Assembly: GCA_021613535.1 (NCBI GenBank)
Contig: CP075494.1
Span: 2,170,001-2,234,000 of the forward strand
Length of the DNA stretch: 64,000 bases
Reading direction: 5' to 3'
DNA from: Adineta vaga
Taxonomy: Eukaryota > Animalia > Rotifera
Shown: positions 3 through 61,470 of the stretch, in pieces
Position numbering within the stretch: position 1 is the stretch's first letter
How the letters are laid out: each line of letters opens with the position of its first letter
Position numbers and translations under genes: made by a program
The notes under the pieces: model-generated
What the model was told of the DNA's origin: nothing
Seen by the model: the letters and a program-made list of their open reading frames with translations, nothing else
The model's database searches: none

Positions 3-26
3 ATTTGAGGATATGGGTGTGGGTGT
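3..26. repeat. Telomere-type palindromic element, left arm only
   Basis: atttgaggatatgggtgtgggtgt. Confidence 0.65.
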
Positions 27-289
27 CGATTGAATTAAAAATTTATATAGAATTCTGTTCAATGAATTTGGATATTGCCGGAATTCCGTTTTACCGTTCT
101 TATATTTTCTATCATACTGAATGCGAGAAATATGGACAAAAACAAGATTATTTCATTGATGATATATATTTTTTTATTTGACAAGCAACTTAAAATTATT
201 CTTACGATAATAAAAATGACAAGAATAAATTTTATTTACAGTTTAGCCTTTGTGTGACATAAATCTCTTTCAATCAAATAGATTTCTAT

Positions 290-1294
290 TTAGACAGTAG
301 GTAGGCGATTATTTCCTGTACGAATCATAGGAAGTTCTAATGCATGAACGATGCGTCGATGTCGAAAATAATGTACAATATTCATTGTTTTTTGTCTTAA
401 CTCGGGTAATGAGCCAATGACAACTATCGGATAAAGAAGTAATGTATAATAAGGACAATACGCTGCAAGAATAAAAACAGCATTTCCAGAATCAAATGGT
501 ATATTGCATATGAAAAGAAAGTTCATAAGTATAAATGGAAATAGGAATATTCCATAAAGAGAAGAAATACTTAAGACTTGGATTGTCATTTTTCGATATC
601 GTCTCCAATCTACTTGTCGTTGTGTTCTATGTTTTTGCCAGATAGTTCGTATTAAAAGAGTAAAACTGGATATGATAATGATGATTATAGGTGCAATAAA
701 ATGAGCGCTTATTTCATATACATAAAGAGCAGCATTTTGAAGAGCACAAGGAGTCATAAATACACCAGAAATATTTTCATATGTATTGACACATTGTGAA
801 GCAAAAAATAAGATTGTATGAAACACAATGCAATAAACAATAATAAATATTGGAGGAAAATAATGAAGAAGAATACGTTTTCGTGTAGTTGCGAGTAAAT
901 CATTGTGAAAAATGAGAATGTGCCGTTCAAATGAAACCCAGGCATAAAGCATACATTGAACAACATAAAATGTCCAATCAATAAATCCCAAAATCATATG
1001 AAATACCAGTGGAAGATAAAACGTTTCAGAAGTGCGAAAATAATGCATAATAAAAGCTATATCTGTCAATTCATAGAATAAATTAATCACAAGAAGAACA
1101 ATAATTACGTGATTGTGAAGAGCATGACGAAGGTTTCGATCATGAAAAAACCAATATAAAGCAAACAATGAACAGCCGATCGATGGAATAATTAGCAGAA
1201 GAAAGAGCGAAAATTGTATAAAATAAAATGTTGTTGTAGCAATTCCTGATAAAAGAACACCACTTTCAGTATAGTTGTCTGTACTTACAGCCAT
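290..1294 (-). CDS. Intronless class A-like 7TM GPCR (334 aa)
   Basis: Seven hydrophobic segments, DRY-like SFERH, TM7 YP motif. Confidence 0.9.
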   Translation of the reverse strand: MAVSTDNYTESGVLLSGIATTTFYFIQFSLFLLLIIPSIGCSLFALYWFFHDRNLRHALHNHVIIVLLVINLFYELTDIAFIMHYFRTSETFYLPLVFHMILGFIDWTFYVVQCMLYAWVSFERHILIFHNDLLATTRKRILLHYFPPIFIIVYCIVFHTILFFASQCVNTYENISGVFMTPCALQNAALYVYEISAHFIAPIIIIIISSFTLLIRTIWQKHRTQRQVDWRRYRKMTIQVLSISSLYGIFLFPFILMNFLFICNIPFDSGNAVFILAAYCPYYTLLLYPIVVIGSLPELRQKTMNIVHYFRHRRIVHALELPMIRTGNNRLPTV

Positions 1295-2468
1295 CGTTGA
1301 TTATGACAAAAAGATATTGACAATAATGTTTAAATTTAACAAAAAATAATTTAAAAAATCTTTGAGACAAAATCTTAGAAAAGAAGCTTGTCTTCTAATC
1401 TAAGTTAAAGTCGGATTATTTTTTCAGTTTTCTATTCTTGACATTTAATGAGATGATTTTAAAGCGAAGAAGCAAAAAATTCTGTTGATGATTAGATGGC
1501 GAATAATTTCTCTTCCATCTAAAATTTTTCATTGTCGTAAGTGAATCTATGTTAAGACGAACAGTTAATGAACGCGTTTTGAACGCATTGAATGTAGGAT
1601 CCGGTGGAACAAAGTTTTTTCGTCCCGATCCCGACGGGATTGGGACCGGGCTCCAGAAAAAAAATAGGATTGGGACAATCTCGCCGGACCCTAATTGAAC
1701 GTACGAAATCGCATTCAGGACGACGCAAACAAAGATATATCGAACTCGTTCAGAATGCACAAGAACACACAAAGAATACGTTCCAAACCGAAGCCGTAGA
1801 CAAGTCACTCTTTTTCTGCCTGGAGTAAGACGGGGGGAGGGGGGGGGAATTATTTAGTTTTTTGGCGTACTAGGCCATCAGGCGCATGTCACAGGCTAAA
1901 TGTTACTTGTGGGTGTGGTGAGATAAGCTGCCATGACCAGTTTCAGTCTTGCTCAACGATCTCATCAGATGATTAATATCTTAATTGAATTTTAAAATCT
2001 AATTTAAACCAAAAAAGTTACAAGCAAATCTTTAAAATCAAAATCCGTTCTAAATAATGTAATTTTGTTCACACATTTCAATAACATAAGAAAGATGTGT
2101 GAATTTGTATTTCATGATAACCTAAGTAATTAATTTAATATTTTGTCATGTAGACCTCATGGCACATACTTTTCATAATTTGAAGTTGAAAATTAGTGTT
2201 GTTGATAGAGAATATTAGTCTATGCAATTTATCCTGTAGACTTCAACTTGCTAAATATTTCTCTGAGACACTAGAGAGTAATTAATGAATTGTCACTAAA
2301 TTGTAAATTTCAGTAACCGTGCTAGATACAGATGATGCTCGTCCTTGGGATTCACCTGACTGTCGATTGTGTGAGGCGAGAATACTTTTTCTGAGAATTC
2401 TACCGAAATTTTGAAAAGATGATCAATGACTTGATGCGCATGAAGGTAGTGATGACACCTAAAATTTG

Positions 2469-2480
2469 ACCCACACCCTC
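2469..2480. repeat. Palindromic element, degraded right arm
   Basis: acccacaccctc. Confidence 0.45.
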
Positions 2481-3355
2481 TCCTGATTTTCAATGTTTTG
2501 CCAGATTCGTAAGGCATAAAAGAAAGCGACAACTTGTGTGATTACGGGTGACAGTCATTCACTAACTTTAAAGATAGTGAAGATATGTCTAATTCATAGA
2601 ATTAACTTCGTTATCTTTTACCTGTATTGATCTGCAATGTTCATTGCAAGTCAGTTTCCAGTTTTAAAATCGAGCAATAAACTATTGATGTCGAAATGAA
2701 AATGATAACGAACGGTTAACCGAATTGTAGAACTGCATAATTATTTAATAAATAATCAAGACTTATCAAAGAAAATTTTTCTTGTCAGAAGACATGAACC
2801 GATCAATTGTGTAGTTTTTCTCTGTTTCTTTCGCAATCTATTCACTGTTTCGGTGAGACGAAGTGTGTTGCTGGTAATTTTATTATCTGGGAGAAAACTG
2901 TCTGATACACATTTAATTAGTCAGATTTTGTAGAAACATCTCTCGATTGTCTCATGATTTTCTAGAAAAAATGTGCTCTTTTCCAGAGTTTATTTCCGTT
3001 GAAATTTCACATGTGTTTTGCTGGTGTTTTTTAAATTTTACCTGTCTGGCTGATTTCTAAAGTTTGAATTTAGTGACCCTGGTTTTGTTATTTTTATAAT
3101 TTTTTGTCGAGTAAAGCGCTATTGCTCCTTCTTCCTCAAGAATTAACTTTATGTTAAGATTTGTTTTTAAAATCTTCATTTGTATTCGAACTCGAATTGA
3201 ACATCTACTCGCTCCTTAAGATTATGCTAGCCTCCTAGTCAAATAATAAAGAAGTAAGAAAAAAAGAAGAATATCACATAAATAAGTTTTCTTTATTGAT
3301 AAGATAAATGAAATATAAAACATGCAACGAATTCACATTTATTTCTTCTTTATTA

Positions 3356-5490
3356 TTATTCAAATGATTTATTGACATAGTTAAATTGTTGAATTTTCCG
3401 TGGATGTTCTCGTCTTTTCATTGGTTTTCTTCTTTGTCTTTGAATTCTTTCTAATTCATTTCGTATTAAATCAATACCAAAACAATATTTTAGCACATCC
3501 ATTAGAATGACAAACAAACAAACACATCCAATTATAATATAACCTGTATAACCAATTGCTTGGGATACAGTCAAACGTACATATAATATTCGTGAAAGAA
3601 CTTCACAATATTTACCAGAATAACTTTTACTCAAACATTCACATTTATATCCATGTAACAATGGTCGACATACACCACCATTGCAACATGTTACATTCTT
3701 ACAATAATTCTTTTTTCTTTCACAATGATCACCAATCCATCCTGATTCACATAGACATTGAAAAGTTGAATTCGATGTTTCATTGCATTGACCTAAACAA
3801 ACAAATATTTCTTTATCTATCAATTATATTATCAAAAATAAAACCATTATTTAAACATGTATTTGATTGACAAGATCGATAATCATTTTCACACATTGAA
3901 CCATTGAAACCTTGTAGACATAAACAATTATAACTATTAAGAATGGTATTATTATCAAAACAAGTGCCATTATTTTGACATGGTTTCATCATTTGACACG
4001 ATGTTGATGAGATATTACAATAGAAACCAATTTTATTTTGTGTACAAGATGATGCAACAAAGTTTAATGAAGGTGAAGATAGTTGATCTTAAAAAATAGA
4101 TAAGATATTAATAAAAGAAGAAGTTTTATAGAAATACACTTGTTTTACTTGATAAAACTGTTGATAACATAGAAATCGATGTATTTTCCACTAAAATTTG
4201 ATTTCAAACTATTTATTATATGATGAAAAGAAATCAAATGATACCTTTCAATATTGAAGTTGAAACCGATAGTTGTGTTGTATATGTATCTATAGGAAAT
4301 ATTCAATAATTTTCAAGTTATTCTATACTTTTCGGATTCTTCGATATTTACCACATGAATTTGTTGATAAAAGGAATTTTAGAACTTGATTTTGTCGTGC
4401 ATCAGTTACATATATATTACCATAAGTATCAAAAGCCATTCGGCGCGGATCTAAGAATATATTCGATGATGAACCACATCCAATAATGCATCGAAAACCA
4501 TTCTGACTTGATCTGATAATTTTTTTACCATTATTATCGACAATAAATATATAATTATCACCATCTAACACAACATCACTGGGTCCATCGAGTTTAATTG
4601 TAGTATTTGATGATGTCTGACCTGCAATTGTTATTCCATTTCGTTGTCCTGGTCGAAACATTTGGATACGTCGATTACTATAATCAGCTACATATAAATT
4701 AAAGTTCATATCAACAAAAATTCCACGTGGAATATTAAGTTTATCTAAAGTAGAACCACCAGTACCGGTTCCAGCGACAAGTATTGATGATGTTCCATTA
4801 TCACCTAACCATCGTTTCATCACTTTATCTTTTGTATAGATAGAACAGTATAAAGTATCATTAATATCAATAAAAAGACCAGAACAAAAATCGTCAACTT
4901 GCATTACAGAAGTAGAAGCACTTGAACCTAATATTCGTTTCTCAACTCTTCCCTGGTTACCATTATCAACATATATATCACCATTTGTTGTGACAAAGAT
5001 AGAGATTGGCGAGATCAAATTGTTAGATATTACATTGGTTGGACTACTTGAATTGTTAAGCCAAATAAAAACATTATTGTTTACTTTATCAGTAACATAA
5101 ATTGAATTATTTGTGCTAAGAAATAAACCAACAGGTTCACTAAATGATATACTATTCCCAATAGTAATTCCATTTGTATTCCAAGTAGTACATTCATCAA
5201 ACTTTGGTTGATTATAAGAAATAGCTAATTTTTATATTGAAAAAGAAAATCACAATAAAATTTCGAAACTGACATTCATACGATTTTAACGTACTTATCG
5301 AAGAACTTGTTATTGTATTAACAGTCTGTACACATAGAACTGAAAAGAAACATAAACTTCTTTCTTCTTTTCATTGATGTAAAAATTCTTATGAAGAATG
5401 TAAAAATATCATTCAATAGATTAAATATCTACCTAAGATTGATATGTTGATAAACAAAAATGTGCATAAATTGAACTTTTTAAATAACAT
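3356..5490 (-). CDS. Type I membrane protein: signal peptide, NHL repeats, EGF-like repeats, TM
   Basis: ATG 5490 (MLFKKFNLCTFLFINISIL). GT-AG exons ~5490-5433, ~5339-5293, ~5224-4352, ~4288-4245, ~4190-4149, ~4088-3845, ~3792-3356. NHL motifs (PRGIFVD..LYVADYSNRRIQ), EGF (CLCESGWIGDHC), TM. Confidence 0.8.
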
Positions 5491-5817
5491 TCTTTTGATC
5501 GGATCGATGAGAAAGTTCTTATTGATTGTTCTATATAATTGTTAGAAATGCAAAGAAAACCAATATCATTTCTTCTTTTTTCTATTTGCTCGTTTTTCTC
5601 CTGATTTGTTTGTCCATTTTTTCATTTTATTTAACATAAGCATGACTTTATAGCTACATACATTTCTGAAAAGTTCCAATGAAAAAATTATTTTCCTGAC
5701 TTTTTTTGTCAATTTAAATAAAGAACAAGTAAAAGAGTCTATAATTTTACTTGATCTCATTCGTTGATAAAGTTTAGCAGATGTAACTGGTGTGAGATTC
5801 ATGTGTAAATATACTAT

Positions 5818-5832
5818 ACCCACACCCTCAAT
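5818..5832. repeat. Palindromic element, right arm
   Basis: acccacaccctcaat. Confidence 0.65.
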
Positions 5833-5871
5833 CATTCAATTGGTTCTTTCTCGAAATTATTTTTCGCGTTA

Positions 5872-5940
5872 ATCAGAGTTTATGGGTGTGGATGGAGACA
5901 GACGACTACTTCACCCACACCCACACTACACCCTCTATCT
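5872..5940. repeat. Palindromic element
   Basis: tatgggtgtggatg..cacccacacccacactacaccctctat. Confidence 0.85.
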
Positions 5941-6136
5941 AAATATCTCTTAGTTTTAAACATTCTCTCATGCACATTATTATAATTTGAAATAAATTTT
6001 ATTTTCAACAAATACATGTAAACGACAAAGAACAATACATACAATATCAAACGTTTCAAGTCTATTAAGTTGATTAAATACGAGTGTCTTCTTCTGGTAT
6101 AATGCTTGACGATATGTTGTATAGTTGTAGAAACAA

Positions 6137-7065
6137 TCATTTAGTTGTTTGTCCTCTTAATTTTTGATAAGTATTTATAATTAATTGTTTCAAATCTCGA
6201 CGAACTGATTTTGATACAATTAAATAAGTATAAAAAGATGCAGCCCCATTGGCAAAAAACAAAACATATGCAATAGTAAATGTAAAACTTTCAATTTGTG
6301 ATAGTATTGAACACTTTTATTTGATATTATAGATGAACTAATCATCATTTCTAAAAGCATTAAGGCAACTGGAGTTGCTGTAATAACATAGACAAATACT
6401 TCAGATATGACAATAATTAACAAATCTCGATCTCGTCGTTGAATAGGAACATTTTTTCCACCTGGTGAATTAGTTGCAAGTGGTTGAACACGAACATGAC
6501 TTTGTGTCATATTACGATAAGTTAAATATCCAAAAATACACAATATAATAGGTGGAATTAAAGCAGTAAATATCATTATATAAACAGTATAAATTGTTGA
6601 ATAGATACTGAATGGATTACATCGTCCATTGACAATTGTGATCATTATTGGAATATGAATAGCTAATAATGACCAAAAAAGAATAGAAAAAAAAATAAGT
6701 CATTTTGCTCGTTTAGGTGTACTGAATGCTCGAATAGATGCACGATTATTTGTAATGATAAAACGATCAATACATGCGAATACAAGCATTGTTTTAGCTA
6801 TTTGTCCAAGATCATTCGATAAATAAGAACGTATTTTACATAAAGCAAATGCACCGATTGTTGCATTACCATAATTAAAAGAAAATAGTTGAAAAATACT
6901 ATTCATAATTGCTGAACATATTAAGTATATTGAACATGCGTTTTGACGACGTTGACTAAAAAGTATAACAATTAACACATTACCAAGATTTTCCAAAATC
7001 ATACAAATTGAATATCCATAAAAATTGAGTTGACTTTGAATAGTTGTCAAAGTTGATGATGACAT
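6137..7065 (-). pseudogene. 7TM GPCR pseudogene
   Basis: ACIDRF motif. In-frame TGA at 6700-6702 where W is expected. Frameshift near 6300, after which another frame reads QIESFTFTIAYVLFFANGAASFYTYL..KSVRRDLK. Confidence 0.85.
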
Positions 7066-8027: not shown

Positions 8028-8080
8028 ATTGAGGGTGTGGATGAAGACTGAACACCCGCACCCACACCCACCCTCGAGAT
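8028..8080. repeat. Palindromic element
   Basis: attgagggtgtggatg..cacccacacccaccctcgagat. Confidence 0.9.
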
Positions 8081-8347
8081 GACGAAAGCATCTCTTCTAA
8101 TCCAAAACATTCTGAAATTCAAATAGTCATTTCTCGAAACACACATATGGTAGATAGTTATGTAATAGAAAGAAAGTGTAGCGTATATGATTATAAGGAA
8201 AAATATTTAGTATGGAATATCATATTCTTGTTGATTGATATAATATATTTAACAAAACAAACAACAAAATTAGATTTGAAATGAAATTTCATTCTTGGAC
8301 GAAAAGCTTGGTCAACATATAGAGTTAAAAGGTATAGTATTAAATAA

Positions 8348-9319: not shown

Positions 9320-10131
9320 GGTTAAGATTATAAAATGAATAAAGAATAGAAAATGAATTATATATTTATCTGCACATTTCTAATTTGCTCTCTATATATT
9401 TTTGACATATCTGGACAAATGTAGGTTAGGTCATATCCTTTATATTTACCACATAATTAACTTTCGATTCTCTTTGCATTTTTATGAGTATATTTTATAA
9501 TCATGCTGTGACAATGACGTATGTATACTGCAATTGACATCTAGTCTTAAACATTACTTTGAATATGAAATAAATGATTGAATACACAATAATCAACAAG
9601 TAACGCTTATCCTAAGTCGATTCATTCGGTCCTAGAATCTCGTTTGTGTTGAAAATTTGTCTGTAAGAGTTTGGGAAGGGGATAGAATCTTCAATTGAAA
9701 CTTACAGTCACTTTGTACCGTATTATCGACAAAATCAATTGAATTTTCATTTTTAGACACTATATATCTTTTCACTCTAGAGAACAAGATGATTCTGCTT
9801 TAAGTGAATGCGTAACTTCGAATTTCATTTTATTTCATTTATTTTACATATTGAAAGAAACGATAATTAAGGAAAAGAAAATAACGTGAATAAAATGTCT
9901 GTTTGAAAACAAATAATTATATCTGGAGAAGAACTCGGTGACATATAACAATCAAAAACATTCTTGAAATAATCTTGTTTTTATCAGGTACCTTATCTAA
10001 ATCGACCAAAGATAGCGCCGATTTTACATGTAAGTTTCATAGCTGAAATTCTATTCGAAAAATCGGCTGTTGGCGAACATTCCATACATAGAATGATACC
10101 AACTGTATCTATTAAACTTTTATATTGACCA

Positions 10132-10199
10132 ATATTGAGGGTATGGATGGATGGATAGAGACACTGACTTGAACGAATCCTCGCCCACACCCTCAAGAT
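10132..10199. repeat. Palindromic element
   Basis: atattgagggtatgg..cccacaccctcaagat. Confidence 0.9.
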
Positions 10200-11744: not shown

Positions 11745-11808
11745 TAATCTTGAGGAATGGATGTGAGTGTAATCGACGACTATAATGACACCCACACCCT
11801 CAAGATTA
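11745..11808. repeat. Palindromic element
   Basis: taatcttgagg..cacccacaccctcaagatta (11-bp perfect ends). Confidence 0.9.
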
Positions 11809-14640: not shown

Positions 14641-14703
14641 TTAGGGTATGAGTGTGGGTTGAGTGCATAAACTCATGTACACCTACACCCACAACCTCAA
14701 GAT
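14641..14703. repeat. Palindromic element
   Basis: ttagggtatgagtgtgggt..acctacacccacaacctcaagat. Confidence 0.85.
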
Positions 14704-17702: not shown

Positions 17703-17780
17703 ATCGAGGGTGTTTTAGGTGAATCTCTTTTTGCTAACCTTCATACTTGCCTACAACCACCACACCCACAACCTCAAGAT
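17703..17780. repeat. Palindromic element at duplication breakpoint
   Basis: atcgagggtgt..cacacccacaacctcaagat. Confidence 0.85.
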
Positions 17781-18572: not shown

Positions 18573-18625
18573 ATCGATATTTGTGGTTGTCACATTCATC
18601 TCTCACACCCGCATCCACTCTACAT
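18573..18625. repeat. Palindromic element, degraded
   Basis: ttgtggttgt..cacacccgcatccactc. Confidence 0.5.
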
Positions 18626-19885: not shown

Positions 19886-20857
19886 ATGAGTCTCTTGTTG
19901 AGTCAAGTCTTGAAAGCAAATCTATACATTCAACCCATATTATTTACTGTCATTATGATTACAAATACTCTTGTAATTCGTGTCTTATGTTCGCGTGCTC
20001 TCCGTATTTCTCCATGCACTTATTATTTGATTATCTATACAATTTTCACTAGTATTTATATTTGCATATCATGTCCAACACAAACATTACGTGGAATATT
20101 TATCGGTTGGGAAAATACATTAATAGGATGTAATATATATTTTTTTGTTTATTTCACACCATCATATATTGCTCAAGCTATGCTTGTCTTAGCTTCATTT
20201 GATCGATATTGTTCTAGTTCAAAATCACATCGATTGAATTCAAGAAGTACGAAACGAACAGCTTATATAAGTATTATAATAACAACAATAACGGCGACAA
20301 TTTACATGTCACCAATGTCGTTCATTTATTATTTTGATGGAACAACAAATACATGTCGACAATATACAAGTTTACCAGTCAATATTTTTGTATTTAGTCA
20401 AATAATTACATATTTTATTCTTGCACCTTTATTAATGATTTTTTTAGGAATTTTAACAATTAGAAATATTCATCGACATTCTATTCTTCGAATAGCACCA
20501 CAAAATTCTGAAAGACATAATCGACGAACCGAAGGACAGTTAACACGCATGTTACTTCTTCAAGTTCTTTCTCATTTAATTCTAACAAGTCCATTCGGTG
20601 TTGTCTACTTTATGAATTCATTTATTCCATCAACTCGTACACCAGATATTATTGCTATACGTTTTATTTTCAGCATTGGAGTACAACTTAATTATTTACT
20701 TTCATTTTTTCTTTATATTTTATCAGGAAGTGTTTATCGAGAACAACTTCGTCGATTATTCAAATTTACTCGACGACAAAATCATTTAAACAATACGATT
20801 CTCAATCCACAAACAGAAGCAAATCATCAGTATCGATTTACTAAGAATAATAATTGA
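19886..20857 (+). CDS. Intronless 7TM GPCR
   Basis: ATG 19886; LRISPCTYY, ASFDRY, YILSGSVYR motifs; the stop TGA is supplied by the adjacent palindromic element. Confidence 0.9.
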   Translation: MSLLLSQVLKANLYIQPILFTVIMITNTLVIRVLCSRALRISPCTYYLIIYTIFTSIYICISCPTQTLRGIFIGWENTLIGCNIYFFVYFTPSYIAQAMLVLASFDRYCSSSKSHRLNSRSTKRTAYISIIITTITATIYMSPMSFIYYFDGTTNTCRQYTSLPVNIFVFSQIITYFILAPLLMIFLGILTIRNIHRHSILRIAPQNSERHNRRTEGQLTRMLLLQVLSHLILTSPFGVVYFMNSFIPSTRTPDIIAIRFIFSIGVQLNYLLSFFLYILSGSVYREQLRRLFKFTRRQNHLNNTILNPQTEANHQYRFTKNNN

Positions 20858-20900
20858 GTGGGTGTGGGTGAGATAGAATTGATCACACCCACACCTTGAT
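20853..20900. repeat. Palindromic element overlapping GPCR stop codon
   Basis: attgagtgggtgtgggtg..cacacccacaccttgat. Confidence 0.88.
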
Positions 20901-22912: not shown

Positions 22913-22969
22913 TTGAGAGTGTGGATGTGGGTTTGGGTATATCTTCTTCACCCACACCCACCCGCATCC
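22913..22969. repeat. Palindromic element
   Basis: ttgagagtgtggatgtgggtttgggtatatcttcttcacccacacccacccgcatcc. Confidence 0.88.
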
Positions 22970-23173
22970 TTTTTTATCGGAAACATGTATCTCGGACGCG
23001 CGACATCTAATACAGACGAATTTGATGATTATGTACGTTTATGTATTCGAATATCTTATGATATGAAAAAGTTAACGAAAATCTAAGAAAGTGTTCGCCA
23101 ATGAACAAGCAAAAGATAACATATGAAAAATTTTATGCAGAACGTATGATCTAATGATTTTCTTTTATTTTTA

Positions 23174-23222
23174 ATTGAGGGTGTGACAGGAGAAGAGATA
23201 CATCCACACTTTTTTCTTAGAT
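23174..23222. repeat. Palindromic element
   Basis: attgagggtgtgac..gagatacatccacac. Confidence 0.7.
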
Positions 23223-26091: not shown

Positions 26092-26140
26092 ATCTTGAAG
26101 GTGTGCAGACACAGGCATTTGCATCCGCATCCACACCCTT
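26092..26140. repeat. Palindromic element
   Basis: atcttgaaggtgtg..catccgcatccacaccct. Confidence 0.8.
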
Positions 26141-26807
26141 TTATAACTCGTATTTTGTCAATCGCATTAATATGAATTATATAATTTCTCGTACAAATCG
26201 TGTTTTTAAATTGTCCATTTCTCTAATAGTTTTGCGACATGTTATATGTTTATCAGGAATCGTATTTTTATATTTCGATACAATTGTCTTTTTCGAATTT
26301 ATATTCATCGATTAGAAATATTTTCCTTTACAAAAAGAAATTTTCATAGAAGATAAATTCAGTCATCGAAAGAATATTTAATCATAACAAATTACATTAC
26401 TGAATATGTAAAAAAAATATTATTTTCTTTGATTTTAAATTAAAATTAAAGAAGAATAAATATGTTTAAATCAAAATAAAAAATCGATTTGTTAATATTT
26501 CAAAGTTATAAAAATACCTGTGCTTTTACGACACAAAATATGCTTTTGTGTATTTACATCAATAGGCACATGGTATAGATTTACCTTTTGTTTTTCATCA
26601 ATATTCACTTTTTGATGACTATAAGCTGATTATTCGATAAAGTATCAATAAGTAAAAATACATTGACGTATGTGACTATCGATCGTCAACTGATCATTTG
26701 CGAAAGAAAAACAAAAATATTCTCCCCTAATATATATATTGTGTATCATAATCATTCATACGTAAAAGACAAGAAATCTTAAACATTGATTATAGATTAC
26801 AATAAAT

Positions 26808-32726: not shown

Positions 32727-32802
32727 TTATGGGTGTGGGTGTGGATGAGAGTGCAGATAACTAATGAACATCCATCCACACCTACACCCACACCCTCAAG
32801 AT
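32727..32802. repeat. Palindromic element
   Basis: ttatgggtgtgggtgtggatg..catccacacctacacccacaccctcaagat. Confidence 0.92.
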
Positions 32803-34598: not shown

Positions 34599-34811
34599 CT
34601 CTTTATTAGTATTGGATCCAATAGTGTTGAAAGATTAATCACCTTTTTTTTCTTTCTATTGGTATATTTTTATTCTGAAATATAATGAAGAATTGAACCA
34701 GGCACTCTCCTAGAGTAATATCCACCTCTTTCTTAGATTCGCACACATACTCTAAAAAAATCGATTTCGAATAAGATGTTCGTAAAGAATGTAGATATTC
34801 GTCAATTATGG

Positions 34812-34870
34812 ATTTAGAGGGTGTGGGTGTGAAAGAAGAAGCGATACACCCACACCCACACACTCAAGAT
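34812..34870. repeat. Palindromic element
   Basis: atttagagggtgtgggtgtg..cacccacacccacacactcaagat. Confidence 0.92.
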
Positions 34871-43662: not shown

Positions 43663-43732
43663 ATGTGAGGGGCCCCTTTAGCAAGAACGAAATCTAGATC
43701 ATGGCTACTTGTCACACCCACACCCTCAAGAT
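43663..43732. repeat. Palindromic element (right arm intact)
   Basis: atgtgagggg..cacacccacaccctcaagat. Confidence 0.8.
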
Positions 43733-46800: not shown

Positions 46801-48944
46801 GACAATCCCATATTCCATTACAATGTAAATACGGATTATTACATGGCCACAATTCACAGTTAGTTTCATCGTTTTCATTTCCATCATTCAGCGAAGACAC
46901 ATGAAGTACCATGCCATCGCATAAAGCTGCAAACGGTACTGACTTGTTGAAGGCAAATCTGTTCATTAAACGTTCATTTCCTGTCTTGGGACAATTTCGA
47001 TTTCCATACTTTAATGCTACAGGCAGCAAGCACTTGGTTTCATAGGATATGCATTTAAGTCGGTTTGAATCGTTCAACTGACATGCAGGAAATAACTCAT
47101 CTTCGTCATAATCACAATCTGTGAATCCATCACCGACCCGATGATATGAAATACATTTTAAAGAAATATTACAATGAAAATAGGATGAGTTTTCACACGA
47201 CACTTCAATACCGGTCGTCGAGCATTGACGGTTGATGCGCGCAAAAAGTGTATTCATAAAATGAAAATGTTGTTTCTCAACATTTTCTGTAAGATTAGAA
47301 ATATGGCAACATGTCAATCCGTCAATTATGTTGATGCGATCGATAGTCGATGCTAATGAAGGACATTTTTGTGCATCAAAACATACAAAATCAGGAGCAA
47401 CATTCCTCTTAAATTCGTCGACCGATCGATTAGTCATATAAATAAATTGAAAATAATCGTACATAATAGGTTTTGCAGGTAAAGTTAGCCATTCATCCGG
47501 ACAATGATTGGCTAAGAATTCACAGTTTCTAGACCAGTTACCTTCGAAATATATATCAGGACCAGGCTTGTCATCATTCAAAGTATAACCTAAAATATTA
47601 TAAATTACAAAACAAAAAAGTATAATAATACGAAATTGAAAATAAAACGGTCGTTCAAATATCGTAGATAAATGTCAAAGAAAATAGAAGTTATATGGTA
47701 TTATGGGTGTGGGTATTCTAATCATACATTACATCCACGCCAACCCACACTCTACAATCGTTTTCTTTTAATTTTCTCATGGTTTCCTGTTGAAACGCCG
47801 TTGATTCACTGACATTTGTTTTTCGTGTGTTGCTTAAGACACCATTTTCACTAAAATACTGATAAGGAACAGAAGGTGTCATTTAAGTTTTCTCAGTATA
47901 GTGAAACCTAGTTATATAAAACTATAACTATACTCACCGTAACTTCGATTGGAGACAGTTAACGTTCTTAATATGATCGAACGACGTGTACATAGCTAAA
48001 ATCACTTGTTTGTCTCGCTCGTTTGCACAAGCAGCTGAATGCGCTGGCATACTACTCTGACTAAAGAATTCACCGTTTCCACATGAAAAAGCAAGCGGAT
48101 ACCGACTAGTACGCTCTTGACATCGAAACGAGAGAGATTCATCACAAGCTGAATTTGATAAAGGATTATATCGGAATTCTTCGGCTTTCTCGTCACTGCC
48201 ATCGAGACAATCTACGCCAAGGTTGCCATCTCTTGCAAATATTAGTGGAATACACTGGCCACCATAATGACAACGGTACTCATCATCATCAGCACATTTA
48301 GTCATCTCCAATATGTCACACCATTGTTCATCTTCTCCACTGATACAGTCAGCTTTACCATCACATACTTCACGCCAATCAAGACATAAAGCCCATGGTC
48401 CACGGTCGCATTCAAATAAGAAACGATAACATGTAATAGTACTCATGTTAAGCGGGATGTGTAAACGATTAGACATAGTCGCTGTAACGATTTCACTGAA
48501 TGACAGAGAGAAATTGTAAACAAAATGGTACTGACATTTTGAGCCAAACCATGATGATGAACAGTTATAGAAAACTTCTGAGCTACTATTATTCATTTCA
48601 TACCGTTCAGCAACATCAATAGTAGCTGACCAATTGAGAAGATGTTCACTAGTCACGCCTTGTTTGCTCAGTTCTTTGAAAGTGATATTTTGTGCTATGT
48701 TTTCTTGTGATATATCAGATTTCTCATCTTGTTCTTCGTCGTCATCATCGGGTCGTCGGCAATAAGGAGTCAACTGATCATTAGAAAAAATGGGTAGGTA
48801 TTCACCTCTTTCGTTTTCAATGGTTTGAGCATACAGACAATCGAATGTCAAATACGAAGCATGACGAATATCAGAATAATATAGTGAATATCGGACATCC
48901 ACAACGGTACATGAAGCAAAAAGTATTATTAAACGTATAATCAT
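43889..48944 (-). CDS. LDLa-repeat plus EGF plus 7TM GPCR (possibly disrupted or chimeric)
   Basis: Exon 48944-47938 (signal peptide, LDLa CLDWREVCDGKADC) and exon 47589-43889 (LDLa, EGF, ACVAIER 7TM); splice phases do not match directly. Confidence 0.75.
47700..47758. repeat. Palindromic element inside an apparent intron
   Basis: attatgggtgtgggta..catccacgccaacccacactc. Confidence 0.78.
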
Positions 48945-49193: not shown

Positions 49194-49221
49194 TATCTTC
49201 TTCATCCACACCCATCCTCGA
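49194..49221. repeat. Palindromic element, spacer plus right arm
   Basis: tatcttcttcatccacacccatcctcga. Confidence 0.65.
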
Positions 49222-49889
49222 AACAGGCGAACGTTTAAGAATGATATTGAAGTGCATTTTAATTTCGTACCAGTTGTTTTAATCAAAAGTATACTATCTG
49301 AAAGTCCACGTAAAGTTACATGTACCTACAAATTTGAACTAAAAAAGTACAAAAGTATTAAGTATTTTGCACAATACTTTGTCTCTGCAATATACTAATT
49401 AATTTTTATTGTGAGTAAGAAAACAGACGAGAAAGACACTTAATATATTTATCTATTTAAAAGCTATATGTTATGTTTATTTCAGAAGTATTTTAAGTTC
49501 GAAGATTTATCTAGATGCCCATAGGCATACTCTATGTTATTTGAAATATTCATGTAAATTAAAATTTTTGATCGACGTCTGTTCTATTCATATCCTCATA
49601 TTCGTACAACTATATAAGAGCTTTACAAGTACATTTTCTTCTCATCATTCACTCAATCTTTTAATTTTTTTTACAAATCTCAAGAAATACCACCTGCGAT
49701 TTTACTTAAGAGTGTATAGCATACTTACATACATTGAGTGATAAGAAGGAATCTATTGAGATTATTTTCATTTTTTATATATCGTGAAATGAGACTTTTT
49801 TCAATCCTATCAATGTGTCAAATTTCCTTTCGATTATTTCGATTTTTCCTTTTCATCATCACTATAGTTACACTATAGAAATTATAGCA

Positions 49890-51870: not shown

Positions 51871-51941
51871 GGAGTGAGTGTAAATGTAGCTCGAATTGTA
51901 GTGTTAAGATATTCTCATTGTTTTCACCCTCATCCTCAAGA
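51871..51941. repeat. Palindromic element, degraded
   Basis: ggagtgagtgt..caccctcatcctcaaga. Confidence 0.55.
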
Positions 51942-52186
51942 GTATTTAAGATGTAAAGATATTCTAATCTGTTGAGCATAGAATTAGATAATAATTTATT
52001 GTCTTCATTATACCAAAATGTCGCTAATTTAGTGAGATTACTGAATTAGATCATGTCGAATAAGTACACAAGTGAGAAAACTACGATATAATGTTCTCGA
52101 TTAAAATCAAACTTTATTTAAAAATCATGACAACTTAGTCTCATGTCATACAATAGTTCTTTAGAATGGTAACAAATATTTTTATT

Positions 52187-53549: not shown

Positions 53550-53605
53550 ATCTTGAGGATGCAGATGTGCGCGAAAAAGATATACCCACACTCACCATCT
53601 GAAGA
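53550..53605. repeat. Palindromic element
   Basis: atcttgaggatgcagatgtg..agatatacccacactcacc. Confidence 0.8.
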
Positions 53606-53754
53606 GGTGGTGGTTCCACCACCTAACATCATTCAATATGTTGCTGCGTATGCTGGGTACACGTTAGTGATAAAAGAAAAAACTCGTATGCGCATTCTGG
53701 CATAGAATAATATTTACTCCATAAACAACATTTTTTCCTAGAAACATCTATTGT

Positions 53755-54996
53755 TCATATACAATTACATGCTGTATCACTGAATTCTTCATCCATTCCA
53801 TATAGTTTCAGTTTCAGGTCCATTGCTGGCTCAACATATATTACCCATCTGAGAACTTGGTCGGAACTTTTTACACAAAATTCATCTCTTTCTTCTTTTT
53901 CATGCTTAAAATAGATTGTATCATAATCGGCCCACCACGCATTCGAGTCGGAGACTTGCCATAATTCCGGACGAGTAATCATGAGGACTTTTCCCATACG
54001 AACTTCTGCACAAATGTATGCACCATCTTTTCTAGCTTTTTGTTCGGTACTTTCGATCGAACGAGCAAAATAAATGCCATATCCTAACATCTGTGGAGGA
54101 ATGTCACTAATCCTCATGTCGCTATGAGCTATTGAAATTGCAGAATCAGCGTTAGTACGATGAAAGCCAATGTAGATTGGATAGTCAGGCGTCCATCTTG
54201 GTTGTGGTCGAAAGTCAGCTGAATGAAAGACGACAATGTGTTCCAGTGTTCGTTCTCGACATTGATAACCATTTTTACATTTTCTATTTCCGAGTGCAGC
54301 TGTTCGAAATTTTTCGATTAGTACATAAGGAATAAATCTTTTATGCTTAGGCGAGAGTGACTTGCGGGTGACTGATGGATTGGCTGTAACAATCGGTTTG
54401 TATGCCCACCATACTCGATAATGATATATATCAAATGCAATGGCTAAAAATGGCAACAATGTGATGACTGCAAAAACAATCAGAATGGCGTGTTCAAACT
54501 GAAAGGTCGTGTGCCTTGAAGATTCGCCAACTACTGTTCCATAGAGAATGACTCCGATTGATCGAAGTATAATGGAAATAGTATGAAAAGCAAGTCGTAC
54601 TTTAAATCTTAATTTAGGTCGAGGTATATAACATGGACAATTACAGTTCAATGACATAAATCGGAGACATGGACGTCGATACCCTTTCACAAAGCAACCG
54701 ATCAAGTGACAGGGACAAGCCATACAACAACATGTCGTCACCAAAACAGAAACAATGATGCTAGAAGCTATCAAACCATTAGCAGCATTGAAACGTTCGA
54801 GTAGAACTGGTGGAAAAATAGTGGTAGTTGTTATTGGCGTACTTGTGCTTATGCCTGAGGTTACGTAGTTCCTTTGCGTGGAAGAGCTCAAATTTATAAT
54901 AACAAAAATTAATGCTGGAAAAGTTATGACCATTTCTGCAATGTTTATTGCACCATACAAGTACGGTAATGAGCGATAAAACTTGCCAGATGGCAT
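53755..54996 (-). CDS. Multi-TM protein with C-terminal PARP-like ADP-ribosyltransferase domain
   Basis: Four hydrophobic segments, then GFHRT, GYGIYFA and DEFCV (H-Y-E-like). Confidence 0.8.
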   Translation of the reverse strand: MPSGKFYRSLPYLYGAINIAEMVITFPALIFVIINLSSSTQRNYVTSGISTSTPITTTTIFPPVLLERFNAANGLIASSIIVSVLVTTCCCMACPCHLIGCFVKGYRRPCLRFMSLNCNCPCYIPRPKLRFKVRLAFHTISIILRSIGVILYGTVVGESSRHTTFQFEHAILIVFAVITLLPFLAIAFDIYHYRVWWAYKPIVTANPSVTRKSLSPKHKRFIPYVLIEKFRTAALGNRKCKNGYQCRERTLEHIVVFHSADFRPQPRWTPDYPIYIGFHRTNADSAISIAHSDMRISDIPPQMLGYGIYFARSIESTEQKARKDGAYICAEVRMGKVLMITRPELWQVSDSNAWWADYDTIYFKHEKEERDEFCVKSSDQVLRWVIYVEPAMDLKLKLYGMDEEFSDTACNCI

Positions 54997-55698
54997 TAGT
55001 AATCAATGACTACTGACGAATTTAATCTAGAAAAGAAGACGTATTTTTTCTATTATTGTTGTTGTTAGAAAAAGAATCGAAATAATTTTACTAAACATTA
55101 AAAAACTACGGTAGAAATCATATTAATATTTTATTAATATGAAAAATAAGTTGATAATTGATTATCAATTGTTCCAATAGTTTTTGTGTTGAAATATCAA
55201 ATGCCCAGATCCAGATCCTCACATCCTCGTTAGATACTTACTAAGAACTCGATATAAAATGCTAGATGAAACAATCTTTCTAATGCAACGATAATCACGA
55301 ATGATTCAAACTTTTTATAGATGTACTATTTCCGCTCTTTTTTCAAAATCATGAAAAATTGTTTGTTTTTCGGTTCTTACCATATTTGGATTACAATCAA
55401 AAGCATGACTACATCAGAATAGAAAAAAAGAATGAGTATAATAGAATTCATCTCAGTCACTATGCACACAACAATTTCTTTTTACAGTTGTAAGCGTCTC
55501 TATCTCTATACATCACAATAAAAAGCAGACTAAAAAGGTTTCTTTACAGTTTGCTGTTTGAATTCAATGAATCTGCTTCCAAAGTTGATTTCGAGATACG
55601 AATTATTTCAGATTGAAGAAACGAGAAAAAGGAAGTGAAATATTAGTAGAGTCAAAGTTTTTCAAAGTAACTAAACGGTTCTAAAACATAAAATGATG

Positions 55699-55770
55699 AT
55701 CTTGAGGGTGGGTGTGGGTGTGTGAAGATACAGTAATAACCAATGTCGATCACACTCACACCCTCAAGAT
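55699..55770. repeat. Palindromic element (best-preserved ends)
   Basis: atcttgagggtgggtgtgggtgtg..cacactcacaccctcaagat (12-bp perfect ends). Confidence 0.95.
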
Positions 55771-56019
55771 TTTTCATGTCGATTGAGAACTAATTTTCTC
55801 TTATTTTGTTTTGAAAAATCACTCTTGTTAACAGATTTATTCGTATACAGATAGATTTAAATTCAGTGTAATTTTGTTTTTATTGTTGAAAAATAGAAAA
55901 AATTAAGACAACTAAATGTATAAAATAAAAGAAGTGATCGTTTGTATTAAAATACAAGATTATTTTTTATATAATCGTAAAGAAATTGAATAGGAAAATG
56001 TTGATGGTTCCTTCTCTTA

Positions 56020-56497
56020 AGCTTTTGACGTATCTATTATATATCTTTGTAGACGTTGTGTTCCTACCCGGTTCAAATTTTGAGAGCACAAGTAGTTTCT
56101 TATCGTGGAAGTTTTTTTTTATCGACTCTCTCAGTCTACTTTGTTCATTGGCACAAGAAAGTGTTGACAATAGTATTGACGTATTTCATGCTTCGACTTT
56201 GCTCACCAATAATCTCAAGTCTTCTGTTCAATTCATGCACGACATAAATGAGACTTTATTGCAGTTTCAAAAAAGAACACCAGCTGCATTTGCTCAAACG
56301 TTAGATCTTGTTCGTACAACTGCACAAGGAAATGCTCTCCTAGCTATGTTTTCATCAAATTGGGATTTACTCGTTGCTGAAAAAGGCCAAGGAAGAAATG
56401 CTGTGTTTCTTACTGCACCTGTCATTCATAACAATATAGCTTTTGACGTATCTATTATATATATTTGTAGACGTTGTGTTCCTGCCTGGTTCAAATT
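56020..56497 (+). repeat. 60-bp direct repeat pair (56020-56079; 56438-56497)
   Basis: 57/60 identical. Confidence 0.95.
56085..56437 (+). pseudogene. Internal fragment of a larger gene, with no start or end
   Basis: Coding-like SLLCSLAQESVDNSIDVF..TLDLVRTTAQGNALLAMFSSNW, flanked by 60-bp direct repeats. Confidence 0.6.
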
Positions 56498-56533
56498 GAG
56501 GGTGTGGGTATATCTTCTTCACCCACACCCAAT
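56495..56533. repeat. Palindromic element
   Basis: attgagggtgtgggtatatcttcttcacccacacccaat. Confidence 0.92.
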
Positions 56534-56848
56534 AAATATAATTGATAAAATAGTACAAATGTAAGATAAGGAACTGTTTTTTTTATCAACCTTGTATGAA
56601 AATTACTACCCTTCAGTATAAATAATTCCTTCATCAGTCGTTGGTATTTTCATTCTTTTGCAATTTTATTGTGAAATATTTTTATGATAGTTATATATTC
56701 TTTCATTTTCATTCTGTAATATCTCAATGATTCCTATGTTTTTTTTCCCCTTTTTTATAAGATATGGCGTCATATAAATCTCAAGTTATATCTATATTCT
56801 ATGTTTTATTGATCAAACTGTACCGTTGTAACGAGAAACGTCGACTAT

Positions 56849-59500: not shown

Positions 59501-59570
59501 CCAAGGGGAACAAACTGATTCCTCATGATTTCTGGTGATTTTCGGCTAGAAATCAGTTTGTTCCTCTTGG
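59501..59570. repeat. 20-bp stem hairpin
   Basis: ccaaggggaacaaactgatt / aatcagtttgttcctcttgg (19/20). Confidence 0.7.
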
Positions 59571-60442
59571 ATTCGCTAGATAATCGAGTACAAAATTCCA
59601 GCTTCCTACTGATACAAGATTGCGTTCGAAGGGAATAAATTGAGTTATTCTAAAATATGGTATTCCTCGACTAGAAAAAGGTGAGTAAATGCATCGTTAA
59701 TAAGACTATTTGGTTCAAAATATTCATGATTATGGTTATATTTGAAAACTTGCTTTAGATTATCTCTTCGTCACGATTGAAACAATAGCAGTCACATCAT
59801 CAGGTAATGTTTCGTTTATTTCACTTTTCCTTTGAATAAAATGACTGATAAGAAAGAGATTCAAATGTGCAATTCTCGTTATCTTGCTCGATGTTTTCTT
59901 TCTAATACAGAATCAATGAACTCAAATAATCGTGCAAATTCACTGAAATATCATTCAACAGGTTATTTTCAAAAAATTCTTTTAGTTTCATTAGGACTGA
60001 TAATGATAATAACAATTTGTTATATATTACTCATAAGTTTTTTTGTCTCAATAATTCGTATAAAAAGATGCGCATATGATATTTTTCGATAAGATATATT
60101 TATATGTATATTAATCTTGTTTACGACAAAGGTTAATGTTTCTTTCTTCGAAGTCGCATAGTCACATTTCAATGATTTTCTATAGAAAAGTAATCATTCA
60201 TTCAGTTCTAATTTTTTTCTATTCATCAAAGGGTATCTCTTTATTTTACCTGTATTTTTTCACGAAAGGAGACAGAAAACGATTTTTATCTTATTATATC
60301 TGTCTTTACATCACAACATATATTTTTCGTACTGGTAATCGCTGTCTCTCTCTCTCTCTCTCTTTCTTTTTCTCATTTGAGAATAATTATCGAAAAACTA
60401 ATCACAAACATTCGTTATTTTTTCAAACAACGACATAACGAT

Positions 60443-60924
60443 ATGGCTTATATGAAAACTAGTATTTACATTACAATGGTGATGGTGATCATTGCAACAA
60501 TTATTAGAATATCGGACGCCTATGATTGTGCTCCTCAAAATTGTAACTGCGGCACTTGTGTAAGTATTGTGGTTGTTTTTCTGGTTCTACAGAATGTACT
60601 AGGGAAAATGAAGGTTTTGCGTGCTGTAAAGAGTGTTGTTTTAAAGATATTAAATACACGGTTGCCTATAATATAGGTGGTTTAAAGAAGGGTGTCTATT
60701 TCAAAACTAATTGTGCGGGTAGTGAATGTGCTTCAAAATACCGCTCAAAAAGTTTAATGCTCGATTCTTCTGGCGCGGAGATGGTCAGTTGTAGTTACAA
60801 AACAACCTGTCCTAGGTATAATTGCTACTGTCCTTGGAATTATGGACTATTTCCACAATCAAACAAGCGTAACTTCATTTCAAAATTCAAACATTTTCGT
60901 TATCAATTGGACGATCGTAAATAA
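60443..60924 (+). pseudogene. Secreted Cys-rich protein (~17 Cys) with a 2-nt frameshift
   Basis: Signal peptide MAYMKTSIYITMVMVIIATIIRISDA; extra GT at ~60560 shifts into the Cys-rich frame. Confidence 0.7.
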
Positions 60925-61442
60925 TTTTTCTTTTTAAAATATCTCATACATATATTCAATACAATGGCACTAATCATCTTAATTCACATTATATATTTAA
61001 CAAATATTATTCATAACTAACCTTTTTTTCTTTTACTCTTTTCTTTTAATAAAAAGAAAATCATTAATATTTAGAAATACATTTTGAGATTCAACATATC
61101 TCTCGTGTCCATAATAATATTTTTCGATATTCAAAGAGAATTTAGGTTAAAACAAAAAATTTGATGATAGATACAGGTAATAAAACAACACAATAATCGT
61201 CTAGTGATGTGCTACATCTACTTTCACATATTTTTCCACAAAAATCCGATATTTGAATTCTTAGCGTTAAAATTTACTTAAAATAAATAACGCTCACCGA
61301 GTGACTCGCTTGACCAGGGTCAGTGAAAGATGAGCACACGACTGTTTATATCCATAATATCTACGAAAAAAAAGCAAATCAGGAATGATATGAATCGACA
61401 TGAATAGAGGAATATATCCATGCTGTCCTTTCTCGATTTTTG

Positions 61443-61470
61443 CCCACACCCTCACCCTCACCCACACCCA
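61443..61470. repeat. Palindromic element, right arm
   Basis: cccacaccctcaccctcacccacaccca. Confidence 0.7.

What the first reader, a model, noticed from the sequence alone, without database searches (positions are those of the whole stretch)
3..61470. Candidate eukaryotic gene-cassette array: ~25 telomere-repeat palindromes divide the region into one-gene modules
Seen: imperfect palindromes ATCTTGAGGG(TGTGGG)n-N10-35-(CCCACA)nCCCTCAAGAT at 3, 2469, 5818, 5872, 8028, 10132, 11745, 14641, 17703, 18573, 20853, 22913, 23174, 26092, 32727, 34812, 43484, 43663, 47700, 49194, 51871, 53550, 55699, 56495 and 61443. Nearly every interval between copies holds one gene or gene remnant with its own flanks, and neighbouring genes are unrelated (GPCR, NHL, rhodanese, FG-GAP, dioxygenase, PARP-like, F-box). 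Only one copy is intronic, although the long introns here hold ordinary MITEs. Conserved ends with a variable spacer and hairpin potential resemble integron attC sites. Inference: these are recombination or joining sites that shuffle whole genes. Alternatives are protein-bound boundary/insulator sites or a tiny MITE with intergenic bias. I know of no description of this system, and no recombinase is encoded here.
Basis: partly seen in the sequence, partly recalled or inferred. Interest (0 to 1): 0.95.

Follow-up and report, generated by a model that had tools for sequence, protein, structure and literature searches.

The report
Telomere-repeat palindromes bounding rotifer genes
In the gene-shuffled outer parts of the chromosomes of the rotifer Adineta vaga, an estimated several thousand 45-80 bp hairpin-forming repeats, each made of two telomere-repeat runs facing each other, sit between genes and often lie where gene-sized blocks have been broken, copied or rejoined, so they may be footprints of how this animal repairs broken chromosomes and stitches in new genes.

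Summary
All 25 listed places carry telomere-type arms. About 18 are full palindromes: cap ATCTTGAGGG, (TGTGGG)n, a 10-40 nt spacer, (CCCACA)n, cap CCCTCAAGAT. The rest are half or decayed copies. The order G arm then C arm is nearly absolute (741 to 7 genome-wide). The window is Adineta vaga chromosome piece C5 at 2.17-2.23 Mb, which is subtelomeric.

The element is a discrete dispersed repeat. Copies share spacer and inner arms but have unrelated flanks. One 18-nt spacer type has about 90 copies. I found no target-site duplication and no filled/empty site. Arm lengths vary independently, from 1 to more than 13 repeats.

Elements lie between genes, usually 60-300 nt past a stop codon and beyond the one transcript end I could map. 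They are rare in chromosome cores.

Homology blocks, both paralogous and A. vaga versus A. steineri, end within 30 nt of an element in 8 of 20 cases, and five end at its outer tip. One element cuts a GH51 gene.

My best reading (0.4) is scars of telomerase-capped break ends joined tip to tip, copied by templated repair and broken again later. A MITE/REP-like mobile element is the main rival (0.3). An integron-like system is not supported. The scan noted this motif in many other windows of this genome; none had been followed up.

The parts
3..28 (.). E1, single G arm at the window edge
   Evidence: no C arm follows within 90 nt
2469..2485 (.). E2, single C arm
5818..5832 (.). E3, single C arm, doublet partner of E4
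5872..5940 (.). E4, full palindrome; the source copy of the 691-nt duplicate starts at its outer right tip
8028..8080 (.). E5, full palindrome near the left edge of the block shared with C5:2.867 Mb
10132..10199 (.). E6, full palindrome inside that block, kept with its spacer in the paralog
11745..11808 (.). E7, full palindrome; in both copies homology stops right after its last base
14641..14703 (.). E8, full palindrome
17703..17780 (.). E9, decayed G arm plus good C arm; the target copy of the 691-nt duplicate abuts its outer tip, sharing GAT
18573..18625 (.). E10, degenerate copy
20853..20900 (.). E11, full palindrome; the stop codon of the GPCR ORF 19832-20857 lies in its left cap
22913..22975 (.). 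E12, full palindrome; spacer and inner arms 97% identical to E24, flanks unrelated
23174..23215 (.). E13, degenerate palindrome
26092..26150 (.). E14, palindrome with decayed arms
32727..32802 (.). E15, full palindrome, orthologous copy in A. steineri (L021:9256-9306); left edge of the conserved LigB module
34725..34751 (.). old spacer plus C-arm relic about 140 nt after the LigB stop codon, present in both species
34812..34870 (.). E16, full palindrome between convergent genes, 28 nt beyond the end of homology and about 110 nt beyond the transcript contig end
43484..43559 (.). E17, palindrome, doublet with E18
43663..43732 (.). E18, decayed G arm plus canonical C arm
47700..47760 (.). E19, palindrome kept in the 94% paralog on C3 (L029:6815-6880), with an indel at its outer C side
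49194..49225 (.). E20, spacer plus C arm only; the C3 paralog block ends inside its spacer
51871..51950 (.). E21, degenerate palindrome; a 95% block shared with C3:19.96 Mb begins in its C arm
53550..53600 (.). E22, palindrome with decayed arms, about 150 nt past the stop of the PARP-like gene
55699..55770 (.). E23, canonical capped palindrome; 87% identical over 69 nt to C5:1136322, flanks unrelated
56495..56535 (.). E24, short canonical palindrome; a 99% repeat shared with C3:18.77 Mb ends at its left tip
61443..61470 (.). E25, single C arm

Best explanation
The elements are repair scars. At a chromosome break, or at the ends of a free DNA fragment, telomerase caps each 3' end with a fixed start (ATCTTGAGGG) followed by TGTGGG repeats. 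Two capped ends are later joined tip to tip, which can only give the order G arm, joint, C arm. Two G-rich overhangs cannot pair with each other. I infer that they are bridged by copying the joint from an existing element (synthesis-dependent annealing, or a reverse-transcribed copy). That would make spacer plus inner arms a copied unit while the outer arm length stays free. Once in place, the hairpin-forming palindrome is a preferred site for new breaks. Gene-sized blocks in the subtelomeres therefore end up bounded by these elements. Selection leaves them only in dispensable DNA just past gene 3' ends. Shown: the anatomy, the orientation rule, dispersal as a unit, the association with breakpoints, and the age of some copies. 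Inferred: the role of telomerase, a templated cap, bridging by copying, and re-breakage.
For: Orientation is 741 to 7 genome-wide and 51 to 3 locally. The two arm lengths are uncorrelated (r=0.04) and range up to more than 13 repeats. The same 10-nt cap also starts long tracts (19 tracts of cap plus 5 repeats, 0 in the control) and G tracts in A. ricciae. No target duplication is present. No filled/empty site appears in about 25 kb of aligned paralogous DNA, although an ordinary terminal-inverted-repeat (TIR) transposon insertion is visible there. Single arms are as common as pairs (54 against 51). A GH51 gene is cut at an element, G repeats follow its sense strand, and its remainder is absent nearby. 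Eight of 20 block ends lie within 30 nt of an arm (P about 3e-3) and five lie at the outer tip (P about 5e-4). The LigB module is bounded by E15 and E16 and has different neighbours in A. steineri. Copies are restricted to subtelomeric regions rich in foreign genes. Published work reports neotelomeres at A. vaga break points, described as leaving scars (PMC13564844), and TGAGGG as a known repeat variant (PMC6431247).
Against: Spacers fall into families with fixed junctions to both arms. One type has 81-93 copies, and every exact copy is preceded by a G arm. Flanks of same-family copies are unrelated. That is what a mobile element would show, and it forces an extra copying step into my model. 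A telomerase-templated cap is untested, because the telomerase RNA is unknown. In the block ending at E7 the whole element, both arms included, sits at the end of both copies; this needs re-breakage at the tip rather than a new scar. The breakpoint statistics are post hoc and rest on 20 ends. No newly formed element was observed.
Confidence: 0.4

Rival explanations
1. A family of very short non-autonomous palindromic mobile elements (MITE-like, or like bacterial REP/REPIN). Its terminal inverted repeats happen to be cap plus telomere hexamers. An enzyme encoded elsewhere would move it. It would insert without target duplication, preferably just past genes in subtelomeres, and the breakpoint association would come from ectopic recombination or hairpin fragility.
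For: The unit is discrete, with defined ends and conserved termini. Spacer families have tens to about 90 copies. Copies share only the element and not the flanks. Copy number extrapolates to about 4,000. The strands fold into hairpins.
Against: There is no target duplication. No filled/empty site was seen. Arm lengths are independent and reach more than 13 repeats. The cap also heads long telomeric tracts. Single arms are as common as pairs. One element sits where a gene is truncated and its other half is absent. No transposase is encoded in the window.
Confidence: 0.3
2. A cis-acting chromatin or transcription element, such as a roadblock terminator, an insulator or a silencing boundary bound by a telomere-repeat-binding protein, kept by selection just downstream of genes.
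For: In tandem gene pairs the element is nearer the 3' side in 21 of 27 gaps. It lies 64-166 nt after annotated stop codons in A. steineri. It lies about 110 nt beyond the LigB transcript contig end. E15 is conserved in position between species. Either reading direction meets the G-rich arm first.
Against: Elements are rare in chromosome cores, where most genes lie. Conserved copies diverge about as fast as their flanks. Many copies are half or decayed. They also occur in divergent gaps (6 cases). This reading does not explain the breakpoint association.
Confidence: 0.1
3. Sites of a dedicated site-specific recombination system that excises and inserts whole-gene cassettes, as integron attC sites do.
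For: Gene-sized blocks are bounded by elements. Some cassettes are bracketed by elements with the same spacer in the same orientation (window coordinates -34709 and -29746). Some homology ends fall exactly at element tips.
Against: No recombinase is encoded here. Several blocks have only one end at an element, and other ends fall inside arms or spacers. The modules have their own promoters and lie on both strands. The GH51 truncation is a break, not an exchange. No circular form is known.
Confidence: 0.07
4. Extremely 5'-truncated stubs of Athena/Terminon retroelements, which attach to telomeric overhangs through C-rich 3' ends.
For: Terminon 3' ends carry (ACACCC)n or (TCACCC)n next to a hammerhead motif, and copies are 5'-truncated by telomeric repeats (PMC6431247). 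The subtelomeric location is the same.
Against: That mechanism gives arms in direct order, which is rare here (6 direct pairs against 51 inverted). No hammerhead or any other Rfam family was found. No hammerhead-core motif precedes a C arm in any of the sequence held. The spacer never occurs without its G arm, so it is not the tip of a longer element.
Confidence: 0.05

Closest known systems
Interstitial telomeric repeats in bdelloid subtelomeres ('short stretches of telomeric repeats' near foreign genes and transposons; PMC2861651, PMC8494291, PMC7943196, PMC13564844)
   Same: Same hexamer, same genome regions, same association with foreign genes and break healing.
   Different: In the papers I could read, the repeats are counted as single hexamer tracts. 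None describes the paired head-to-head unit, the fixed 10-nt cap, the spacer families, the near one-per-gap spacing, or the coincidence with block boundaries.
Head-to-head telomere fusion relic (human 2q13) and telomerase-inserted interstitial repeats at repaired breaks in mammals (from my own knowledge)
   Same: The order is G-strand repeats, then C-strand repeats. There is no target duplication and the origin lies in end capping and joining. Telomerase-RNA-derived extra bases have been reported next to some inserted repeats, which would parallel a templated cap.
   Different: Here there are an estimated several thousand copies of 45-80 bp, with a conserved cap and a copied spacer, lying between single genes.
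Telomere-bearing elements of ciliates (Oxytricha TBE1, Tetrahymena Tel-1; from my own knowledge)
   Same: DNA segments bounded by inverted telomeric repeats, in the orientation of a free linear molecule.
   Different: Those are transposons with their own transposase and target duplications. Here the bounded segments are ordinary, unrelated host or foreign genes.
Bacterial REP/REPIN elements and MITEs
   Same: Short, imperfect, hairpin-forming palindromes in high copy number, lying outside genes and mostly past gene 3' ends, with subfamilies. REP elements also make no target duplication.
   Different: The arms are telomere repeats of variable number. No RAYT-like or other mobilising enzyme is known. 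Many copies are single arms, and the elements are tied to rearrangement junctions.
Integron attC sites
   Same: Imperfect palindromes with conserved ends and a variable middle, lying between single-gene units.
   Different: There is no integrase. The 'cassettes' have promoters and lie in either orientation. The ends are telomere repeats, and junctions are often one-sided.

Membership tests
Integron attC / gene cassette array | Tyrosine integrase (IntI) with attI next to the array | tested here: not met
   Pfam scan of 30 ORFs of the window found no integrase, transposase or reverse transcriptase. The whole genome was not scanned.
Integron attC / gene cassette array | Mostly promoterless cassettes in one orientation, each ending in one attC | tested here: not met
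   Genes lie on both strands. The LigB module carries about 1 kb of conserved upstream DNA and its own transcript start.
MITE (cut-and-paste, non-autonomous) | Terminal inverted repeats flanked by a target-site duplication | tested here: not met
   Inverted ends are present, but 21 well-formed copies show no direct repeat in their flanks.
MITE (cut-and-paste, non-autonomous) | Filled and empty sites among related sequences | tested here: inconclusive
   None was found in about 25 kb of paralogous or orthologous alignment. The sample is small.
MITE (cut-and-paste, non-autonomous) | Dispersed copies that share the element but not the flanks | tested here: met
   E23 versus C5:1136322, E12 versus E24, and other pairs.
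Telomere fusion / break-healing scar | G-strand repeats followed by C-strand repeats, never the reverse | tested here: met
   741 to 7 and 51 to 3.
Telomere fusion / break-healing scar | Lies at the junction of sequences with different histories | tested here: met
   8 of 20 block ends, plus the GH51 truncation. Twelve ends are not at elements.
Telomere fusion / break-healing scar | Joint sequence arbitrary at each event | tested here: not met
   Spacers form families. An added copying step is needed.
Athena/Terminon 3' end | Hammerhead ribozyme motif immediately before the C-rich repeats, with arms in direct order | tested here: not met
   No Rfam hit, no motif match, and direct pairs are rare.
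REP/REPIN | A RAYT (Y1 HUH) transposase gene flanked by the repeats | not tested

The most novel reading that the evidence does not exclude
The palindromes are reversible chromosome fission/fusion joints. A break in the spacer would leave two ends that already carry correctly oriented telomere seeds, and two capped ends would be re-joined by copying a joint from another element. On this reading, bdelloid subtelomeres are chains of gene-sized, telomere-capped fragments, including incoming foreign DNA. The elements would then be both the footprint and the working part of the route by which these asexual animals integrate foreign genes and reshuffle their own.
Probability: 0.25. Interest if true: 0.9.

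Novelty: new variant of a known kind. Interest (0 to 1): 0.72.

Why it matters
Bdelloid rotifers are the textbook case of massive horizontal gene transfer and of survival after wholesale chromosome breakage. How fragments are protected, rejoined and integrated is still open. If these palindromes are tip-to-tip joints of transient neotelomeres, they give a sequence signature that can be counted, dated and searched for in irradiated or desiccated lines. They would then mark where blocks were joined, including the edges of foreign genes. Even if they prove to be a mobile element, a telomere-armed, gene-punctuating repeat with an estimated several thousand copies is missing from the transposon counts I could read, which report a low load for this genome. 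It would also confound the use of the TGTGGG hexamer as a marker of 'telomeric' context.

Tried and rejected
- **Rfam:** one chance microRNA-like hit at E=0.78 and no hammerhead.
- **Hammerhead motif:** a regular-expression search for a hammerhead core followed by a C arm, over all sequence held, found nothing.
- **Homoeolog comparison:** the window genes have only 41-53% paralogs elsewhere, so there is no collinear copy to compare.
- **Exact look-up of the FG-GAP protein** to obtain annotation: not on record.
- **FG-GAP orthologs:** none closer than 70%, so the E14/E15 edges could not be tested.
- **PARP-like gene orthologs (87% DNA identity):** the non-coding DNA is too diverged to place block ends.
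- **Rotaria and A. ricciae loci around LigB paralogs:** these are core-like regions with almost no elements, so they say little about distribution.
- **Spacer orientation versus gene direction:** judged by eye, no pattern.
- **Proximity of same-family copies within 264 kb:** not significant (P=0.31).
- **Cassette insertion into the GH51 gene:** rejected, because the other half of the gene is not on the far side.
- **Key papers not held** (Gladyshev and Arkhipova 2007; Arkhipova et al. 2017; Rodriguez and Arkhipova 2016), so an earlier description there cannot be excluded.


Full report
**Where this is.** The window is G000:C5:2170001-2234000 of a 100.8 Mb, six-piece genome. Paralogs of window proteins are named Adineta vaga on contigs of 13.9, 16.9, 18.1 and 20.4 Mb. 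This is therefore the chromosome-level A. vaga assembly, and the window lies 2.2 Mb from a chromosome end. TGTGGG is the bdelloid telomere repeat (PMC8494291). TGAGGG is a known variant, seen as (TCACCC)n at Terminon ends (PMC6431247).

**The observation.** Every listed coordinate carries telomere-type arms, and the motifs are far above chance. The full form, from 21 well-formed copies, is:
- ATC-TTGAGGG, then one to several TGTGGG units;
- a spacer of 10-40 nt;
- the mirror image, ending CCCTCAA-GAT.

About 18 of the 25 listed places are such pairs. Five are single arms and some are decayed. As single strands they fold into hairpins.

The order G arm then C arm is close to a rule. The pattern GGGTGTGGG, 10-40 nt, CCCACACCC has 741 matches genome-wide against 7 for the reverse order. 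A 13+13 nt version gives 30 against 0. In 264 kb around the window the count is 51 against 3, with only 6 pairs in direct order. Scaling from that region (9 exact-pattern matches, at 8 loci, for 51 detected pair matches) gives roughly 4,000 paired elements in the genome. This figure is an extrapolation.

**Location.**
- The exact-pattern hits listed for C1 lie at 0.13-2.16 Mb and beyond 11.55 Mb, with none in between.
- One spacer family (about 90 copies) lies almost wholly within about 3.5 Mb of contig ends, or in the C1 11-18 Mb region.
- The elements are therefore a feature of the dynamic, foreign-gene-rich regions and not of genes in general.
- Within those regions they occur in tandem (27), convergent (8) and divergent (6) gaps between long ORFs. 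In tandem gaps they are nearer the stop-codon side in 21 of 27 (binomial P about 0.003, my own count from that table).
- With independent gene calls in A. steineri, 8 of 10 intergenic gaps hold an arm or element, typically 64-166 nt past a stop codon. None convincingly lies inside a gene.
- For the LigB gene, contigs from three runs that are probably RNA (the tool's guess) end at 34698-34701. The stop codon is at 34598 and E16 starts at 34812, so the element is outside the mature transcript. Short contig pieces that match only element cores, with other flanks, show that other copies are present in those runs.
- Two environmental contigs also carry canonical capped copies.

**It is a copied unit.** Spacers are not random filler. 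Seventeen of 54 have a nearest neighbour scoring 12 or more, against 0.8 after shuffling. The type with spacer TTAAGAGTATAGYCTGAC has 93 copies when anchored to its G arm and 81 for the 16-nt core. All 27 exact cores are preceded by the G arm at the same junction, so the spacer is not the tip of a longer element.

Copies of the same family share 21-69 nt of spacer plus arms at 87-100% identity, with no homology in 250-400 nt of flank. There is no target duplication. The lengths of the two arms are uncorrelated (r=0.04) and reach more than 13 repeats, as at C1:16327983-16328150. The same 10-nt cap heads 19 tracts of five or more repeats (0 in the control), and it heads G tracts in A. ricciae.

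**Age.** E15 has an ortholog in A. steineri with the same spacer. E6, E7 and E19 are retained in paralogous blocks of 79-94% identity, and they diverge about as much as their flanks do.

**Breakpoints.**
- **LigB module, between species.** Only window 32840-34784 is alignable by blastn to 20 kb and 13 kb of A. steineri. The multiple alignment carries the homology into E15, and it stops 28 nt before E16. The six genes of the A. steineri contig map to different A. vaga chromosomes.
- **Block 8172-11807**, shared with C5:2.867 Mb. In both copies it ends exactly after the last base of E7, and it starts 45-92 nt from an element.
- **Block 43889-49198**, 94% identical to a stretch on C3. It ends inside the spacer of E20.
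- **A 95% block shared with C3:19.96 Mb** begins inside the C arm of E21.
- **A 99% repeat shared with C3:18.77 Mb** ends at the tip of E24.
- **A 99.3% inverted duplicate of 691 nt** starts at the outer tip of E4 in the source. It is joined to the outer tip of E9 at the target through a shared GAT, and its other two ends are not at elements.

Counting all blocks of at least 84% identity that I could examine, 8 of 20 ends lie within 30 nt of an arm (P about 3e-3), and five lie at an outer tip (P about 5e-4), against random placement in non-ORF DNA. These tests are post hoc and small, and 12 ends are not at elements. An ordinary terminal-inverted-repeat (TIR) transposon insertion in the same data (L012, about 5038-6095) shows what a filled/empty site looks like. 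No element showed that pattern.

About 29.7 kb before the window, an element cuts a GH51 arabinofuranosidase gene after the first 66 of 239 profile positions of its catalytic domain. G-strand repeats directly follow the sense strand, and the missing part of the gene is neither next to the element nor beyond the neighbouring cassette.

**Interpretation.** A pure scar model explains the following:
- the orientation rule and the free arm lengths;
- the single arms and the absence of target duplication;
- the gene truncation and the block edges;
- the subtelomeric range.

It does not explain the copied spacers. A pure mobile-element model explains the copied unit and the conserved ends, but little of the list above.

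I therefore favour a combined model. Break ends are capped by telomerase, starting with the cap. Two such ends are then joined by copying a joint from an existing element, so that spacer and inner arm phase are inherited while arm length is not. Old elements are re-used as break sites. Every step beyond the anatomy is inference. The integron analogy fails on its defining features. A general terminator or insulator role is unlikely given the absence from chromosome cores, although a local effect cannot be excluded.

**Prior knowledge.** The papers I could read describe interstitial or 'short stretches of' telomeric repeats, neotelomeres and Terminon ends. They do not describe this paired, capped, spacer-bearing unit or its relation to block edges. 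Three key papers were not held, so prior description cannot be excluded. First readers of this scan flagged the same motif in many other windows of this genome (467 notes matched my look-up), and none had been followed up.

Noticed in passing
window 5933-6623 and 17778-18468: A very recent (99.3%) inverted duplicate of 691 nt that carries the 3' part of a GPCR-like ORF. The copy at 17778-18468 nearly fills the interval between E9 and E10.
   Followed up: yes
window 32840-34784 versus L021/L022: The bacterial-type LigB dioxygenase module is 83-92% identical in DNA between A. vaga and A. steineri. The other five genes of the A. steineri contig find only 71-79% matches, scattered over other A. 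vaga chromosomes. Either those matches are paralogs, or this module moved between lineages recently.
   Followed up: partly
window 53707-55432 versus L034-L039: The PARP-like gene is 87% identical in DNA to contigs labelled Rotaria magnacalcarata and to Logan contigs. That is high for a different genus, so contamination of those samples by an Adineta, or exchange between lineages, should be considered.
   Followed up: no
window 23512-23757: A GATA-rich inverted repeat of about 90 nt per arm. The adjacent stretch 23341-23557 is 94% identical to C1:2748651; it looks like an ordinary MITE.
   Followed up: no
window 56017-56497: A 423-nt unit, 99% identical to C3:18769132-18769554, followed by a repeat of its first 58 nt that ends at E24.
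   Followed up: partly
L012:5038-6095 (window coordinates 79038-80095): A 1,059-nt insertion with long terminal inverted repeats, present in one copy of a segmental duplication of about 9 kb (window coordinates 76981-86725 and 96606-104905) and absent from the other. This is an ordinary DNA transposon.
   Followed up: partly
L008:238-919 and L007:5254-9763: A truncated GH51 gene lies next to an expansin-like (DPBB) gene and a GH5 cellulase gene. These are bracketed by two elements with the same spacer in the same orientation. An FkbM-type methyltransferase and a P450 gene follow. This is a cluster of foreign-looking genes.
   Followed up: partly
L040:2158-2471 (A. ricciae): Runs of a different repeat (GTTTGGG) lie in mixed C- and G-strand orientation, starting with a C-then-G pair. 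Short GTTTGGG runs also occur in A. steineri (L021:6062, L022:4968).
   Followed up: no
L048:1259-1307 and L049:1184-1246: Two contigs of one environmental metagenome (Ga0116226) carry canonical capped elements, so wild relatives have them too.
   Followed up: no
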